64,000 bases of DNA from positions 9,152,035 to 9,216,034 of the forward strand of contig NC_081369.1 in NCBI RefSeq assembly GCF_030684315.1, read 5' to 3'. Source of the stretch: Stegostoma tigrinum. Taxonomy: Eukaryota. The translations under genes and the position numbers were made by a program. The notes beneath the pieces are model-generated. The model did no database searches and was not told the DNA's origin. It saw nothing but the letters and a program-made list of their open reading frames with translations. Of the stretch, positions 29,137 through 33,853 are shown piece by piece. The first letter of the stretch is position 1; every line of letters begins with the position of its first letter.

Positions 29137-29179
29137 ATGAATTTTCTCTGTCTGATTCTGCTTGAAGTTATTCTTACAG
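29137..29179 (+). CDS. Gene B exon 1, signal peptide MNFLCLILLEVILT
   Basis: ATG at 29137, hydrophobic 14 codons, phase-1 donor ACAG|gtactt. A 166-nt intron leads to the V exon, the typical split leader of Ig-superfamily genes. Confidence 0.8.
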
Positions 29180-32100
29180 GTACTTGCTTATTTAATTGAC
29201 AGAACTGCTTTAGTTAACGAAAAGCTTCCGAAGCCATTCTTCATTCATTTAAATAATCTTATTTCCTCTATCTGGTGAATTATTTAACTCTTCTATTTAT
29301 ATGCTGTATATAACAGTTACCTGTGCTGTTCTACGTTTCTCATAGCTGCAGACTGCGCTGGGTTCAGTGTTACTCAAACGCCTAAAGAAGTAACTGTGAA
29401 CAGATGGACGGACGTTACTTTCTACTGCAAATTCACCATCTCTCCGCACAGTTCAAAGCCAGAAGTAATTTGGTGGAAGCAGATTGGAAATGAACGTTTT
29501 CAGACGAGTGCAAGAAAACGATTTGGCTTTGCAAATGAAAGTACAGCTTTCTGTAACATTTTGAGCGTTACTGTGCAGGATTCTGGAGTTTATTACTGTG
29601 CAGTGATTTATCAAGGAATAGGTCAAATAAACGGAACCGGATCCCATTTATTTGTACACGGTAAGTGAGAGAGTGATAATGTCGGGAATATTTCCAAATA
29701 ACGATATTTTCGGATCGCTTATTTCAACATCTTTGGAAATACAATCATAGTCATTGGTCATTTGCGCCGCAGCCCACATTTAATATTTCTGTTCTCTTGA
29801 AAGAACTGCATTTGGGCAATGATTATCACAGGCAAAAAACCGCAGCATTTAGAAGTATTAACCATTTATAATTCCAAAGACAACGTGTGCGCGAATTGTG
29901 TATTTCCGATCCATCGAATTTCGAATGGAGATGTCCGACGAAAAACTGCTATATCAAAGCTATTTCACCACGATTCTTAGTTCGTGGTGTGTTCTTGTTG
30001 TCTTGAAAACTCCCAATTACTCGTTCTGAGGTTCGAGCGTCCAGAAATTAACTCTCACACAATTTTCGCGTCATGGTTTGAAAATCAGTGTGAAATGATT
30101 TCGTGATGAACGGGATCAATGCAAAAGAAGGGGCGATTTGAAGCATTCTACTCAGTGGAATCACATACCTTCAATAAAGGCGTAAAACAATATTGAGAAT
30201 CAGTAGCTCCTGAGGCTAACCTGATTTCATATATTTGTTCATTAGCAATGCTGCATTTTGTAATTTGGCTCATGCAGTGATCTTCATTTGCAGAACAATG
30301 AGCAGCTTCATCGTCATTACACACAAGCTTAAAAACACAAGGGCTCGTCCTTTCCTCTGCCCTGGCTCAAATTAATTAATTCGTTCAATTATGCGAGCCA
30401 AGCATTGCTGAGCATTTTGTTGCTTTCTTCTGCTGCGTAAAATCAAATATTGGACTTGATGCTTCAAATAAAGGTGAATACATGCCACAGGCATGAAAGC
30501 TATTTATTTTATTAGCTGGAAGCTTGTACATAAAAACAAACAGACAAGATACTGCGCCATTTAATACTGCGATTATGATAAAGCAGAACTGAAAATCATA
30601 GTCAAATTTATTTTCTGATTTTGTACAATAACTTGGCTTTGTTCATTCTCTTCATGCAGTTGCCCCAGTCCCATTGAAAATTACGTCCAAGTTAGACAAA
30701 GAAAATTCGCCTGCATCTTTGACCCTGCTGTGTGAAACATCTGCATTTTATCCGGAGGATTTCACCCTCGTCTGGTATAAAAACGGCACCGAGACTACAG
30801 TCGGAATAAAGACGACTGAGGTGCAGAACAGTAAGGGGCTGTATGAAGTAACCAGTTCTTTGTTTGAGTCTCAACCTCCCCCAGACAATACCAGGTATAC
30901 TTGTTCGGTATCCCACGCCTCCCTCAAGACTCCTGCTACCGTCGTCCACACTATTTCCACATTTGCAGGAGTCCAAAAAGGTGAGTTAGTTATTGTTAAG
31001 CAAGTAACAAAATGTTCCGTATGATGTGTGTATATGATGGAGCTAATCCGCGGGACTTTTGTGGGAAATGTCTCATTTTAATGAATTATATCAAATTGTC
31101 ATTTGTGTCGCAAAAGCAGCTAAACTTTTTATTGGCATTTGATTTCCTTTATTTACGAAAAGATAATCGTATTCAGAACTGAGCTGTTCGAACCATTTCT
31201 TTCTTTCCGTCATTTTGCGCCGTTCACCTTTGTTTCAGTGTCAAAAAAAATTCCATCTCTTTCATGCGCCGACTTTCCTTGTATTGTTGCCAGGGGCAAC
31301 AGTGTTTTAGGTTTCGGTCTGGCGCCTACCACCGCATTCCCCGGTTGTTGTATCCAATGCTGATTTTTAAGGCCTTACCCTTTGGCAAGTGTGTGACCGC
31401 ACACCCATGCACAGCATGTGCAATGAGGATCGCGCTCACACATACCGCCAAGTTTACATGATGATTTTGCTTGTCCGTGGTGTGGCAGATTTAATACATT
31501 AACAGTGTCCTCACTTCGTCAAACAACAATTTATTACAACTAATCCGTAGACGTGAGAGATAATGGGAACTGCAGATGCTGGAGAATTCCAAGACAACAA
31601 AATGTGAGGCTGGATGAACACAGCAGGCCCAGCAGCATCTCAGGAGCACAAAAGCTGACGTTTCGGGCCTAGACCCTTCATCAGAGAGGGGGATGGGGAG
31701 AGGGAACTGGAATAAATAGGGAGAGAGGGGGAGGCGGAGGCGTCCTTTGTTATGCAATGACTATCGTAAACACAGCCCATTTACTTGCTAAGAGTTCATA
31801 ACCGACTGCCCCAAACGGTCAGCAGAGAAAATGTTTGTGATGCTGCCAGCAGAGAAAACGTTTGTGAAATTACGCCTCTAAGTTCAGGAAAACATATGTT
31901 AACATGTAAGAAAAGTCAAGAAGAACAGTATTTTGGTCCATCGGGAATCGATTCGATTGTACTCTTACCTCTCCAAAACAATCCTTGGTCACGAACAGAC
32001 AATCCATTCCAATGATTTAGTCCGAACTTGCCATGTGCTCGGGAAAATAAGTCACGTCGACATTCAACTGAAATATTATTTGGCTCTTCAGCGTTTTTAT

Positions 32101-33853
32101 TGCCCTTCAGCGGCGTAGAATGTTTGAAAACATCATCATACTTTACGCAGTAAACTACAGCTAGACTTATTCTTATCCAACAGTTTACCAGCAAATAATG
32201 TCCTCTTAATTCTGCAGATAATACCAACAATTCACTCGTTTTCTGGATTCCTATTTGTGCCGTGGTTGGATTCGCATTTCTTGTGCTAATCGCCGTAATT
32301 GCAAGAGGACATAGATTTCAGTCTAACAAAAGTAAGATATATTGTAAGCACTTGATTTTCGGTCCAGTTGCGCTCTAGGGACAACAAGAGAGAAAAAAAG
32401 GGTGATTTAGTATGTTCGGAAGAAAGCTAAACGATTTAAAGTCGAAAACGCGAGCGATTTTTTTTCAGCGCGCTCAGACTGTTCCAAACCCATTTCATAA
32501 CGCAAAAATGCTCACAGTTTTGTGATCAGAATTTTAATATTTCACAGGGGCGTGAGTTAGCAACAGAAAGTTTCACGTTTGAATGCAACTAATGACATGT
32601 ACCATTACAAACATGAAGTTGGTAATTTGATTCTTCTGGTGAGCAATGAGTGTTCCTTAAAGAACGGGAGGATGAAAAACAGATGTTGACCATGCGATAC
32701 TCTTGTCGTTTCTATTAGAAAGTAATCACCATTGTTATGCATCAACTGCATATTCTCACCTTTTTTCTGTCGTTTTGACTGAGAAGCTTAAAGCTTCGTT
32801 TTTCGTATAGAAACTGGGTTAAAATAATTCCGCCACTCAATGTAATTATATGCCATTGATATGTAGGTAAAGAAGGACGCGCAAGGCAACTGGATCGTCA
32901 AGACAACGTGGTGAGTGCATGTCTTCATCACGATAGGGGTTTGCAATGTCCGGGACGATTACAATGAAGGAAGAAATATACTAATCACGTCAGAACATTT
33001 TAAGTTTATTTATTGACGGGCGTGCTCACCAAAGGAGATTTGAAATGCAGTTGGTTCTATGTTGCGTTTGATAAGGTATGTTAATTGGATTTTTAAAAAC
33101 TTGGTTGTATTTAAGAGAATGTTTCTAGCTAATAACACTTTAAAAATTCAGTCAATCTTTAGTTTTGGCAATAAATTTACTGTCCAATGTTTTTTTGACA
33201 TTGAAACAGTTGTTGAAGAACGAATGAGAAAAAGCTTAGCTTGTTAAATTGACCAGTGTGCACTAATATTTGAATTCACGCGAACATACCTGAAAAATGG
33301 ATTTGCAAGTGATCTCAGGCTCAAGTTACATTTGTTCACAGCTTGGTAAACGAATTGTTGAAGACATGAAATAGTGACTAAATGAAATATTTTGCTGCTG
33401 ATCCTCGTAGGAAACCGCGGCTCAGGGTGCGCAATACGATGCGGTCGCATTCAGCAGAGACAAGAAAGCTCCAAGACGAACATTTGAAGTGGAGAGAACC
33501 AACTACGCTGAGGTACGGCTGAGAAACAGGAGAAGAAAGTAGAATTTCATGGTGAAATCGCGATTCAGGCTGTCAACGAGATAATTTGCCCCTGTTGATA
33601 CCGACGATCTGAGACATTGAAAGTTATTTGAGTGCCGTTTTGATGACCACCTTGCAGAAATGTGGGAAAAAGAGATATTAATTTTTTTTTCAAAATGCTG
33701 CCTTTACAGGTCCGTCAAGATGCTGTCGCTGATGAGGTGCCCTACTGTGCGGTAACTTTGACTAGTTCAAAGAAACCAGAGAAGTACCACAGACCCAAAA
33801 ATGGCACAGAGTATGCCCCGTTGCAGACTGGAAGACCAAAAGAAGTACGATAA
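29137..33853 (+). CDS. Six-exon Ig-superfamily type I membrane receptor (gene B): leader, V(J), C1, TM, cytoplasmic ITIM + ITSM-like; SIRP-like / non-rearranging antigen-receptor-like, 326 aa
   Basis: Exons 29137-29179, 29346-29660, 30660-30980, 32218-32331, 32867-32910 and 33710-33853. All introns are GT-AG with phases 1,1,1,1,0. The joined length is 981 nt, open to TAA. Domain motifs: FYC..WWKQ..DSGVYYC..NGTGSHLFV; LLC..FYP..WYKNG..YTCSVSH; TM LVFWIPICAVVGFAFLVLIAVIA; tail VPYCAV and TEYAPL. Confidence 0.9.
29346..29660 (+). CDS. Gene B exon 2, V-set domain with J-like G strand
   Basis: Acceptor tttctcatag. Reads AADCAGFSVTQTPKEVTVNRWTDVTFYCKF...WWKQ...DSGVYYCAVIYQGIGQINGTGSHLFVH. Donor G|gtaagt. 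Confidence 0.95.
30660..30980 (+). CDS. Gene B exon 3, C1-set Ig domain
   Basis: Acceptor ttctcttcatgcag. Contains LTLLCETSAFYPEDFTLVWYKNG...GLYEVTSSL...YTCSVSHASL. Donor G|gtgagt. Confidence 0.95.
31555..31740 (-). mobile_element. Penelope-derived terminal fragment in intron 3 of gene B
   Basis: Near-identical to 35645-35780. Confidence 0.85.
31655..31686 (-). ncRNA. Minimal type I hammerhead ribozyme motif
   Basis: Minus strand CU-CUGAUGA-AGGGUCUAGGCCC-GAAACGUC-AG: core boxes, stem II, palindromic ACGU stem/loop III. Confidence 0.65.
32218..32331 (+). CDS. Gene B exon 4, transmembrane exon (no charged TM residue)
   Basis: Acceptor ttctgcag. Reads DNTNNSLVFWIPICAVVGFAFLVLIAVIARGHRFQSNK. 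Donor A|gtaag. Confidence 0.9.
32867..32910 (+). CDS. Gene B exon 5, 44-nt cytoplasmic exon
   Basis: atgtag|GTAAAGAA...AACGTG|gtgagt. Converts phase 1 to phase 0 as exon 6 requires. Same-size homologous exons occur at 17966-18009 and 57697-57740. Confidence 0.8.
33710..33853 (+). CDS. Gene B exon 6, tail with ITIM (VPYCAV, 33737-33754) and ITSM-like motif (TEYAPL, 33806-33823)
   Basis: Acceptor cctttacag. Reads VRQDAVADEVPYCAVTLTSSKKPEKYHRPKNGTEYAPLQTGRPKEVR*. Confidence 0.85.
   Translation, partial: VRQDAVADEVPYCAVTLTSSKKPEKYHRPKNGTEYAPLQTGRPKEVR

What the first reader, a model, noticed from the sequence alone, without database searches (positions are those of the whole stretch)
29137..33853. 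Germline-joined VJ-C1 receptor with an inhibitory ITIM/ITSM tail: an antigen-receptor-like ectodomain that does not rearrange
Seen: six GT-AG exons join into an open 326-aa type I membrane protein. V and a J-like strand (YYC...NGTGSHLFV) share one exon with no RSS between them. A C1-set domain follows, then an uncharged TM, then two tyrosine motifs 23 residues apart (VPYCAV, TEYAPL). Established: V+C1 is the Ig light chain/TCR layout. C1 domains are largely restricted to Ig, TCR, MHC/B2M, tapasin and SIRP-type molecules. ITIM followed by ITSM is the PD-1-type SHP-1/SHP-2 docking arrangement. Non-rearranging VJ-C1 genes (e.g. chicken PRARP) have been proposed as relics of the antigen-receptor precursor. 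Inference: this is a probably uncharacterised elasmobranch inhibitory leukocyte receptor.
Basis: partly seen in the sequence, partly recalled or inferred. Interest (0 to 1): 0.85.

Follow-up and report, generated by a model that had tools for sequence, protein, structure and literature searches.

The report
Shark V-C1 inhibitory receptor gene
This is an intact shark gene for a cell-surface receptor with one antibody-like variable domain, one constant domain and an inhibitory signalling tail; it is one more member of a large receptor family of sharks, rays and chimaeras that databases label only "SIRP-alpha-like".

Summary
There are seven GT-AG coding exons at 29137-33853 (+), giving 360 codons, not six exons and 326 aa. 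The missed 102-nt in-frame exon (33411-33512) adds a second pair of tyrosine motifs with the same 23-residue spacing.

Pfam confirms a V-set and a C1-set domain. V and the J-like G strand share one exon and there is no RSS. The membrane segment is uncharged.

The gene belongs to a family of about 80 stored V-C1-TM proteins. All 40-odd that I looked up come from sharks, rays or chimaeras. Pipelines name them inconsistently: SIRP-alpha-like, SIRP-beta-like, tapasin-related-like, MHC class II beta-like, lambda-like. The family has inhibitory members (uncharged TM plus ITIM/ITSM) and members with Arg or Lys in the TM, so it looks like a paired-receptor family.

V and C1 trees both place this gene with bamboo-shark and zebra-shark proteins, inside a group shared by several shark orders.

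Membership of SIRP is not shown. The family profile scores SIRP-alpha d1-d2 and an Ig lambda chain alike. PRARP could not be tested.

No RNA data were found, so splicing and expression remain unproven.

This scan had already noted many paralogues of this family elsewhere in the same genome. The finding is a new member of a known kind and of moderate interest.

The parts
29137..29179 (+). Exon 1: start codon and most of the signal peptide (14 codons + 1 nt, split leader, phase 1)
   Evidence: The leader is 13/14 identical to Chiloscyllium punctatum GCC43311.1 (P0002). An in-frame stop lies 22 codons upstream.
29346..29660 (+). Exon 2: end of the leader plus the V-set domain with a germline-joined J-like G strand (YYC ... 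NGTGSHLFV)
   Evidence: Pfam V-set E 1e-9, covering the whole model. Family V HMM 120 bits. AlphaFold2 pLDDT 90.7 with strands A A' B C (C') D E F G, a G-strand bulge and no C''. No RSS.
30660..30980 (+). Exon 3: C1-set domain
   Evidence: Pfam C1-set E 7.6e-12. Family C1 HMM 140 bits. Model pLDDT 86.8. Best Foldseek matches are MHC class II beta2 domains at 31% identity. 74% identical to zebra-shark P0152.
30981..31024 (+). Possible read-through of the exon 3 donor: 14 extra codons then a stop, which would give a soluble V-C1 form
   Evidence: The NCBI zebra-shark 247-aa isoforms P0004/P0151 end in a similar read-through peptide, 10 of 14 residues the same. Weak evidence: no RNA here.
32218..32331 (+). 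Exon 4: short stalk, uncharged transmembrane helix, basic stop-transfer
   Evidence: 51% identical to the TM regions of P0162 and P0152. The Cys at the start of the TM is shared by most family members.
32867..32910 (+). Exon 5: 44-nt cytoplasmic exon that shifts the phase from 1 to 0
   Evidence: It aligns with the 'KEECTRQPDDRDKV' segment of P0152.
33411..33512 (+). TNYAE(+V), tyrosines 23 residues apart
   Evidence: AG/GT borders. Tail HMM 29.9 bits, E 5e-8. 62% identical to P0152 residues 289-314.
33710..33853 (+). Exon 7: second tyrosine module, VPYCAV (ITIM) ... TEYAPL (ITSM-like), 23 residues apart; stop TAA at 33851-33853
   Evidence: Tail HMM 36.4 bits, E 4e-10. 62% identical to the C-terminus of P0152.

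Best explanation
This is an intact, single-copy gene for an inhibitory member of a paired-receptor family of cartilaginous fishes. Family members are built as leader, V(J), C1, TM and tail. Proposed mechanism: the V domain presents a long B-C loop and an 11-residue F-G loop and has no CDR2, and it binds a still unknown ligand. The C1 domain acts as a spacer or pairing module. After ligand engagement, Src-family kinases phosphorylate the four tail tyrosines. These form two ITIM/ITSM-type pairs, each spaced 23 residues apart, a spacing that suits the tandem SH2 domains of SHP-1/SHP-2. Recruiting those phosphatases dampens activation, as in SIRP-alpha, PECAM-1 or PD-1. Relatives with Arg or Lys in the TM and short tails would be the activating counterparts. 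Shown here: gene structure, domain types, family membership, motif pattern and taxon range. Inferred: expression in leukocytes, phosphorylation, phosphatase recruitment, and ligand binding by the V domain.
For: Seven exons with canonical borders and an open 360-codon frame. V-set and C1-set domains with confident folds. There is a sharp family boundary: members score at least 77 bits on the V HMM and at least 56 bits (nearly all 70 or more) on the C1 HMM, while all other hits score at most 58 bits on V and under 12 on C1. Every family member whose source I looked up (about 40 clusters) is chondrichthyan: Stegostoma, Chiloscyllium, Heterodontus, Heptranchias, Mustelus, Scyliorhinus, Hypanus, Hemitrygon, Mobula, Callorhinchus. 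Of 81 stored members, 30 have an uncharged TM plus ITIM/ITSM, 15 have Arg or Lys in the TM and no motif, and 4 have both. The V and C1 trees agree on the position of this gene, with support 99 and 98. The tail modules match the family tail profile. Contigs of four DNA-like runs carry the gene with no frameshift or stop and at even depth. The ESM Atlas feature search with the closest full-length relative puts SIRP-alpha clusters first, at 0.97 and 0.96.
Against: There is no RNA evidence for any junction or for expression. No annotated protein for this gene turned up in the protein collections, although close relatives did; it may be unannotated or poorly expressed. The first motif (AQYDAV) has Ala at -2 and is not a canonical ITIM. 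TEYAPL has Leu at +3, whereas a strict ITSM has Val or Ile. Function is inferred from motifs only.
Confidence: 0.75

Rival explanations
1. The family is the cartilaginous-fish (co-)orthologue of SIRP. On this view the gene is a true SIRP-alpha that has one C1 domain instead of two.
For: NCBI names many members 'tyrosine-protein phosphatase non-receptor type substrate 1-like' or 'SIRP beta-1-like'. The family profile aligns end to end with SIRP-alpha d1-d2 (62.7 bits), and d3 is the best single C1 match seen with the family profile among the four PDB alignments examined (44.0 bits). The tail has four tyrosines in two pairs and the family has inhibitory and activating forms. The Atlas feature search puts SIRP-alpha first.
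Against: An Ig lambda chain scores the same as SIRP-alpha d1-d2 (64.5 against 62.7 bits). SIRP does not appear among the 150 best hits of the V domain or among the 50 listed Foldseek rows for V. There is only one C1 exon and no further Ig exon in intron 3. The V domain lacks the C'-C'' region that SIRP V has (gaps in the alignment). Synteny could not be tested.
Confidence: 0.25
2. The family is the cartilaginous-fish counterpart of PRARP. PRARPs are the non-rearranging V-C genes of chicken and other tetrapods described by Fu et al. 2019 (J Immunol 202:1992).
For: As far as I recall the paper, the layout is the same (VJ, C, TM, cytoplasmic tail). PRARP is listed among IgSF genes with joined VJ domains in PMC11599192 and PMC10751288.
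Against: Nothing was tested here. The paper is not held and no PRARP sequence could be obtained. No bird, reptile or amphibian V-C1 protein appeared among the V-domain hits that I looked up; the squamate hits are multi-Ig proteins without a family-type C1.
Confidence: 0.2
3. The gene is a silent or decaying copy: an unexpressed paralogue in a rapidly turning-over cluster.
For: No RNA holder was found. No annotated protein was found in the collections. A decayed V exon of the same family lies about 16 kb downstream, so copies in this cluster do die.
Against: All seven exons are open with canonical splice sites. Every conserved family residue is kept: both Cys pairs, the Trp, and the G-x-G, L and V of the J motif. 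Over 5.5 kb the reads show only five substitutions, with no indel and no stop.
Confidence: 0.1
4. The gene is a direct relic of the pre-RAG antigen-receptor precursor, as proposed for UrIg and UrIg2.
For: It has a split leader, V and J in one exon, and a C1 domain, which is the same gene logic that PMC12227049 stresses for UrIg2. The C1 exon hits UrIg2 C domains (26 and 24 bits).
Against: The V exon shows no similarity to UrIg2 V (-3.3 bits). The V domain lacks C''. The C1 is nearer to MHC class II beta2 (47 bits). In this scan's earlier notes the MHC genes lie on other pieces of the assembly (unchecked). The family is large and fast-evolving, as innate paired receptors are.
Confidence: 0.07

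Closest known systems
SIRP-alpha (SHPS-1, PTPNS1) and the SIRP paired-receptor family
   Same: An N-terminal V domain with a J-like G strand. A C1-set domain. An uncharged TM. A tail with four tyrosines in two ITIM/ITSM-type pairs. Activating relatives with a charged TM. The family profile aligns over all of d1-d2 (62.7 bits) and d3 (44 bits).
   Different: One C1 domain, not two. A V domain about 10-13 residues shorter in the C'-C'' region. No closer in sequence than an Ig lambda chain. The charged TM residue of the activating relatives is mostly an Arg near the outer face, not the mid-membrane Lys I recall for SIRP-beta/DAP12. The ligand is unknown.
PRARP (Fu et al. 2019, chicken and other tetrapods)
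   Same: A non-rearranging VJ plus C domain, TM and cytoplasmic tail. It is cited as a VJ gene relevant to antigen-receptor origins.
   Different: It could not be compared, because neither sequences nor the paper were reachable. PRARP is reported from tetrapods; this family was seen only in cartilaginous fishes.
UrIg and UrIg2 (shark non-rearranging Ig-like genes; PDB 9dmx)
   Same: Found in sharks. Split leader. VJ in one exon. C1-set domains. The highest-ranked PDB entry for the C1 exon (summed over its three C domains).
   Different: UrIg has three C domains and is secreted. UrIg2 has nine or more C domains. They have no ITIM tail. Their V domains are unrelated to this one at the sequence level.
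NKp30 / NCR3
   Same: A non-rearranging VJ-type domain. It appears among the Foldseek matches (3noi, 6yjp). I recall an N-G-T sequon in its G strand too.
   Different: NKp30 has no C1 domain and, from memory, a charged TM and activating signalling.
Shark IgNAR V domain and CD79b
   Same: These are the best structural matches of the V model (TM 0.79-0.84), with the same compact V lacking C''/CDR2.
   Different: Only 22-25% identical. IgNAR V rearranges. No sequence-level affinity.
MHC class II beta2 domain
   Same: The best single-domain sequence match (47 bits, E 2e-11) and the best fold match (31% identity) of the C1 exon. This explains the automatic names of the zebra-shark relatives.
   Different: There is no peptide-binding domain. 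Here the C1 follows a V domain.

Membership tests
Chondrichthyan V-C1 paired-receptor family (unnamed; 'SIRP-alpha-like' in RefSeq) | V domain with the family signature (WWK, DSGxYxC, NGTGSxLxV) | tested here: met
   Family V HMM 120.4 bits against 58 or less for non-members. The invariant and near-invariant columns are kept.
Chondrichthyan V-C1 paired-receptor family (unnamed; 'SIRP-alpha-like' in RefSeq) | A single C1 domain with the family signature, directly after V | tested here: met
   Family C1 HMM 140.4 bits. The C1 tree places it with zebra-shark P0152, support 98.
Chondrichthyan V-C1 paired-receptor family (unnamed; 'SIRP-alpha-like' in RefSeq) | A tail built of Y-x20-Y modules (ITIM-like, then T/S-x-Y-A) | tested here: met
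   The tail HMM hits exon 6 (E 5e-8) and exon 7 (E 4e-10). The spacing is 23 residues in both modules.
SIRP | An ectodomain of V plus two C1 domains | tested here: not met
   There is one C1 exon. No further Ig-like hit lies between exon 3 and the TM exon.
SIRP | Sequence closer to SIRP than to other V-C1 proteins | tested here: inconclusive
   SIRP-alpha d1-d2 scores 62.7 bits and an Ig lambda V-C 64.5 bits with the family profile. The Atlas features favour SIRP-alpha.
SIRP | An inhibitory tail with four tyrosines that recruits SHP-1/2 | tested here: inconclusive
   The pattern is present when exon 6 is included. Binding was not tested.
SIRP | Orthologous locus (synteny) and CD47 binding | not testable with these tools
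PRARP | Sequence relatedness of V and C to chicken PRARP genes | not testable with these tools
   The paper is not held and no PRARP sequence was available.
Rearranging antigen receptors (Ig/TCR) | A V segment ending in an RSS, with separate J and C | tested here: not met
   V and the J-like strand are continuous in one exon. There is no canonical heptamer/nonamer.
UrIg/UrIg2 | VJ followed by three or more C1 domains, with a V related to UrIg V | tested here: not met
   There is one C1. The V exon has no similarity to UrIg2 V. Architecture as described in PMC12227049.
NKp30/NCR3 | A single VJ domain without C1, and an activating TM | tested here: not met
   A C1 exon is present and the TM is uncharged.

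The most novel reading that the evidence does not exclude
This large family of cartilaginous fishes could be the surviving lineage of an ancestral non-rearranging VJ-C1 receptor. SIRP, PRARP and perhaps the rearranging receptors would also descend from that ancestor. Its MHC-class-II-beta2-like C1 and its compact V without CDR2, which resembles IgNAR V, would then bear on how the antigen-receptor and MHC C1 domains, and the unusual IgNAR V, arose.
Probability: 0.1. Interest if true: 0.75.

Novelty: new member of a known kind. Interest (0 to 1): 0.38.

Why it matters
Cartilaginous fishes are the oldest living lineage with Ig, TCR and MHC, and non-rearranging VJ-C1 genes (UrIg, UrIg2, NCR3, PRARP) are central to current ideas on how antigen receptors arose. 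A large paired family of V-C1 receptors, spread across sharks, rays and chimaeras, goes unmentioned in the UrIg2 and shark-MHC papers I could read. It deserves a name, a phylogeny and a ligand search. This gene adds one intact inhibitory member with a corrected seven-exon model. On its own it changes little.

Tried and rejected
- **RNA evidence:** The look-up of sequencing runs (kind rna) found only four DNA-like runs of one study. Laying them showed the genomic sequence with introns and no spliced contigs. Every reported joint is anchored in a very high-copy repeat in intron 3 and is an artefact.
- **Synteny:** The window holds no other recognisable gene.
- **Comparator sequences (SIRP, PRARP, NCR3):** the three homologous-protein searches returned family members only, because of the word pre-filter. 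As a result I could not build trees with outgroups from other vertebrate classes.
- **PRARP literature:** the paper is not held. The UrIg 2023 paper is not held either.
- **Exon 6 against exon 7:** BLASTP finds no alignment. The 'duplicated module' idea therefore rests on the shared motif pattern and spacing, and on the family profile, not on pairwise similarity.
- **Rfam and tandem repeats:** nothing found.
- **Joined protein:** There was no full-length search, fold or exact look-up of this gene's product. The natural relative P0152 served as the full-length proxy.

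
Full report
**Observation.** The start codon is at 29137 and is preceded by an in-frame stop 22 codons upstream. The exons are:
- a 43-nt leader exon, 29137-29179;
- a 315-nt V exon, 29346-29660;
- a 321-nt C1 exon, 30660-30980;
- a 114-nt stalk/TM exon, 32218-32331;
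- a 44-nt exon, 32867-32910;
- a last exon, 33710-33853, ending in TAA.

All borders are AG/GT, and the leader, V, C1 and TM exons end in phase 1, as is usual for IgSF genes. Pfam finds a V-set domain (E 1e-9, whole model covered) and a C1-set domain (E 7.6e-12). V and the J-like G strand are continuous. There is no canonical RSS heptamer in 29000-30700, and only one weak RSS-like hit (non-canonical heptamer, 6/9 nonamer) in the whole gene.

**The missed exon.** It is 102 nt, in frame and has AG/GT borders. A profile of the family's tails hits it at E 5e-8 among all six-frame pieces of the window, next to the last exon at E 4e-10. It is 62% identical to residues 289-314 of the closest annotated full-length relative, zebra-shark XP_059507523.1 (P0152, 363 aa). 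In that protein the segment sits exactly between the equivalents of exons 5 and 7.

With this exon the CDS is 1083 nt, or 360 codons. The exon carries AQYDAV and TNYAE (completed by the Val that opens exon 7), with the tyrosines 23 residues apart. That is the same spacing as VPYCAV and TEYAPL in exon 7. BLASTP sees no pairwise similarity between the two modules, so the parallel rests on pattern and profile only.

No full-length search, fold or exact look-up of this product was done, and P0152 served as the full-length proxy.

**Is the gene intact and real?** No RNA run holds the stretch. The four runs that do hold it are DNA-like, come from one study, and include the introns. Their contigs break only at a repeat in intron 3 (31476-31843) whose summed depth runs into the millions. 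Over 5.5 kb the reads differ from the window at five sites, with no indel and no stop. One difference is coding: 29360 G>T changes Gly to Trp at the fifth residue of the V exon. Depth is otherwise even, which fits a single-copy gene. Expression and splicing therefore remain unproven. The support for the exon chain is homology to annotated transcripts of relatives.

**What family is it?** A search with the V exon against 1.84 billion representative proteins found many 220-460-aa proteins with one V match. With HMMs built from an alignment of 18 of them (A1), the stored proteins split sharply. Family members score at least 77 bits on V and at least 56 bits (nearly all 70 or more) on C1. Everything else scores at most 58 on V and under 12 on C1.

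Every member whose source I looked up is from a cartilaginous fish: Stegostoma, Chiloscyllium, Heterodontus, Heptranchias, Mustelus, Scyliorhinus, Hypanus, Hemitrygon, Mobula and Callorhinchus. Their automatic names disagree with each other: SIRP-alpha-like, SIRP-beta-1-like, tapasin-related-like, MHC class II beta-like, NCR3-ligand-1-like, lambda light-chain-like. That disagreement marks an uncurated family.

Of the 81 stored members:
- 30 have an uncharged TM and ITIM/ITSM motifs;
- 15 have Arg or Lys in the TM and no motif;
- 4 have both;
- 16 have neither;
- 16 have no TM.

This is the make-up of a paired activating/inhibitory receptor family. The present gene is of the inhibitory kind.

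**Position in the family.** The V tree (quick method) and the C1 tree agree. This gene groups with Chiloscyllium P0002 and the zebra-shark P0152/P0004/P0161 set, with support 99 and 98. That group sits inside a larger one with Heterodontus, Heptranchias, Mustelus and Scyliorhinus proteins; in the V tree two ray proteins join it. P0002 also shares 13 of 14 leader residues and similar upstream sequence, so it is probably the orthologue.

Identity to the nearest relatives is 60-66% in V and 74% in C1. So V, the likely ligand-binding domain, diverges faster than C1. No protein of this very gene turned up, although proteins 60-74% identical did. The gene is apparently not annotated in the collections searched.

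**Structure.** The V exon folds with pLDDT 90.7. Its strands are A, A', B, C, a vestigial C', D, E, F and a G strand broken by the G-x-G bulge. There is no C'' strand, and so no CDR2. The best Foldseek matches are shark IgNAR V domains, CD79b, TCR V-alpha, nanobodies and NKp30, at TM 0.76-0.84 and 20-25% identity. SIRP-alpha d1 is not among the 50 listed rows.

The J-like motif reads N-G-T-G-S-x-L-x-V across the family. Asn replaces the canonical Phe and creates a conserved N-glycosylation sequon.

The C1 exon folds with pLDDT 86.8. It is closest to MHC class II beta2 domains both by fold (31% identity) and by sequence (47 bits as a single domain). That is ahead of any single Ig, TCR, UrIg2 or SIRP constant domain in the same search.

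**Comparison with known families.**
- **SIRP and Ig lambda.** The family profile against all PDB sequences gives an Ig lambda V-C 64.5 bits, SIRP-alpha d1-d2 62.7 bits, SIRP-alpha d3 44.0 bits and UrIg2 49.3 bits. SIRP is therefore as close as an Ig light chain, but no closer.
- **ESM Atlas.** A feature search with P0152 puts SIRP-alpha clusters first (0.97, 0.96). This is a lead, and it probably reflects the tail as well as the ectodomain.
- **SIRP membership fails on architecture.** There is one C1 exon, and the intron before the TM exon hides no Ig exon.
- **UrIg/UrIg2.** These differ in domain number, tail and V sequence.
- **NKp30.** It lacks a C1 domain.
- **PRARP.** This name is real: it comes from Fu et al. 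2019 and is cited in PMC10751288 and PMC11599192. I could not test it, because neither the paper nor any sequence was reachable.

I found no paper describing this family. The UrIg2 paper does not mention it in its text on non-rearranging shark genes.

**Mechanism (inferred).** An uncharged TM plus two ITIM/ITSM-type pairs spaced 23 residues apart is the docking arrangement for the tandem SH2 domains of SHP-1/SHP-2. I recall spacings of about 24-26 residues for SIRP-alpha and PD-1. I therefore read the protein as an inhibitory receptor whose V domain binds an unknown ligand, balanced by relatives with a charged TM.

A read-through of the exon 3 donor adds 14 codons and a stop. It resembles the C-terminus of the 247-aa zebra-shark isoforms, so a soluble form is possible. 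The evidence for that is thin.

**Context.** The window holds no other recognisable gene. It does hold a decayed, frameshifted V exon of the same family at about 50014-50290. Earlier notes of this scan place further family members 5 and 9 kb beyond the window's end and over more than a megabase of the same piece. They also call the genome zebra shark. I did not check those notes. The scan had thus met this family many times before, on other DNA of the same genome.

**Verdict.** This is a real, intact gene and its domains were read correctly, but one exon was missed. It is a new member of an existing yet uncharacterised family that works like SIRP-alpha without being shown to be a SIRP.

Noticed in passing
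window 50014-50290 (+): A decayed V exon of the same family, hit in two reading frames (21.6 and 17.7 bits). WWKQ and a G-S-D-H remnant of the J motif are still visible, but the B-strand Cys is lost. No C1 or tail exon lies near it. It is probably a dead paralogue about 16 kb downstream.
   Followed up: partly
window 31476-31843 (intron 3): A very high-copy interspersed repeat. Summed contig depth reaches millions in all four runs, and contigs of the locus break there. All 'joints' reported by read laying are anchored in it.
   Followed up: no
window 29360: All four public runs read T where the window has G. This changes Gly to Trp at the fifth residue of the V exon. Four other differences (29030, 29953, 31496, 32011) are non-coding.
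   Followed up: partly
window 30981-31024: Reading through the exon 3 donor gives 14 codons and a stop. The peptide resembles the end of the 247-aa zebra-shark isoforms XP_059507815/16, so a soluble isoform may be conserved.
   Followed up: partly
window 29630-29644 and family alignment A1/A2: The family's J-like motif is N-G-T-G-S-x-L-x-V. The canonical Phe of FGxG is replaced by Asn within an N-x-T sequon. If glycosylated, this would sit on the face that Ig and TCR V domains use for pairing.
   Followed up: no
window 32250-32260 (start of the TM) and family alignment A1: A Cys at the outer end of the TM helix is shared by most family members. This gene also has two extra Cys in V, at residues 3 and 69 of the exon. 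Whether they form an extra disulfide or link chains is unknown.
   Followed up: no
window 2993-3631: An assembly gap (N run 3076-3230) flanked by CA/GA-type simple repeats. I left it as it is.
   Followed up: no
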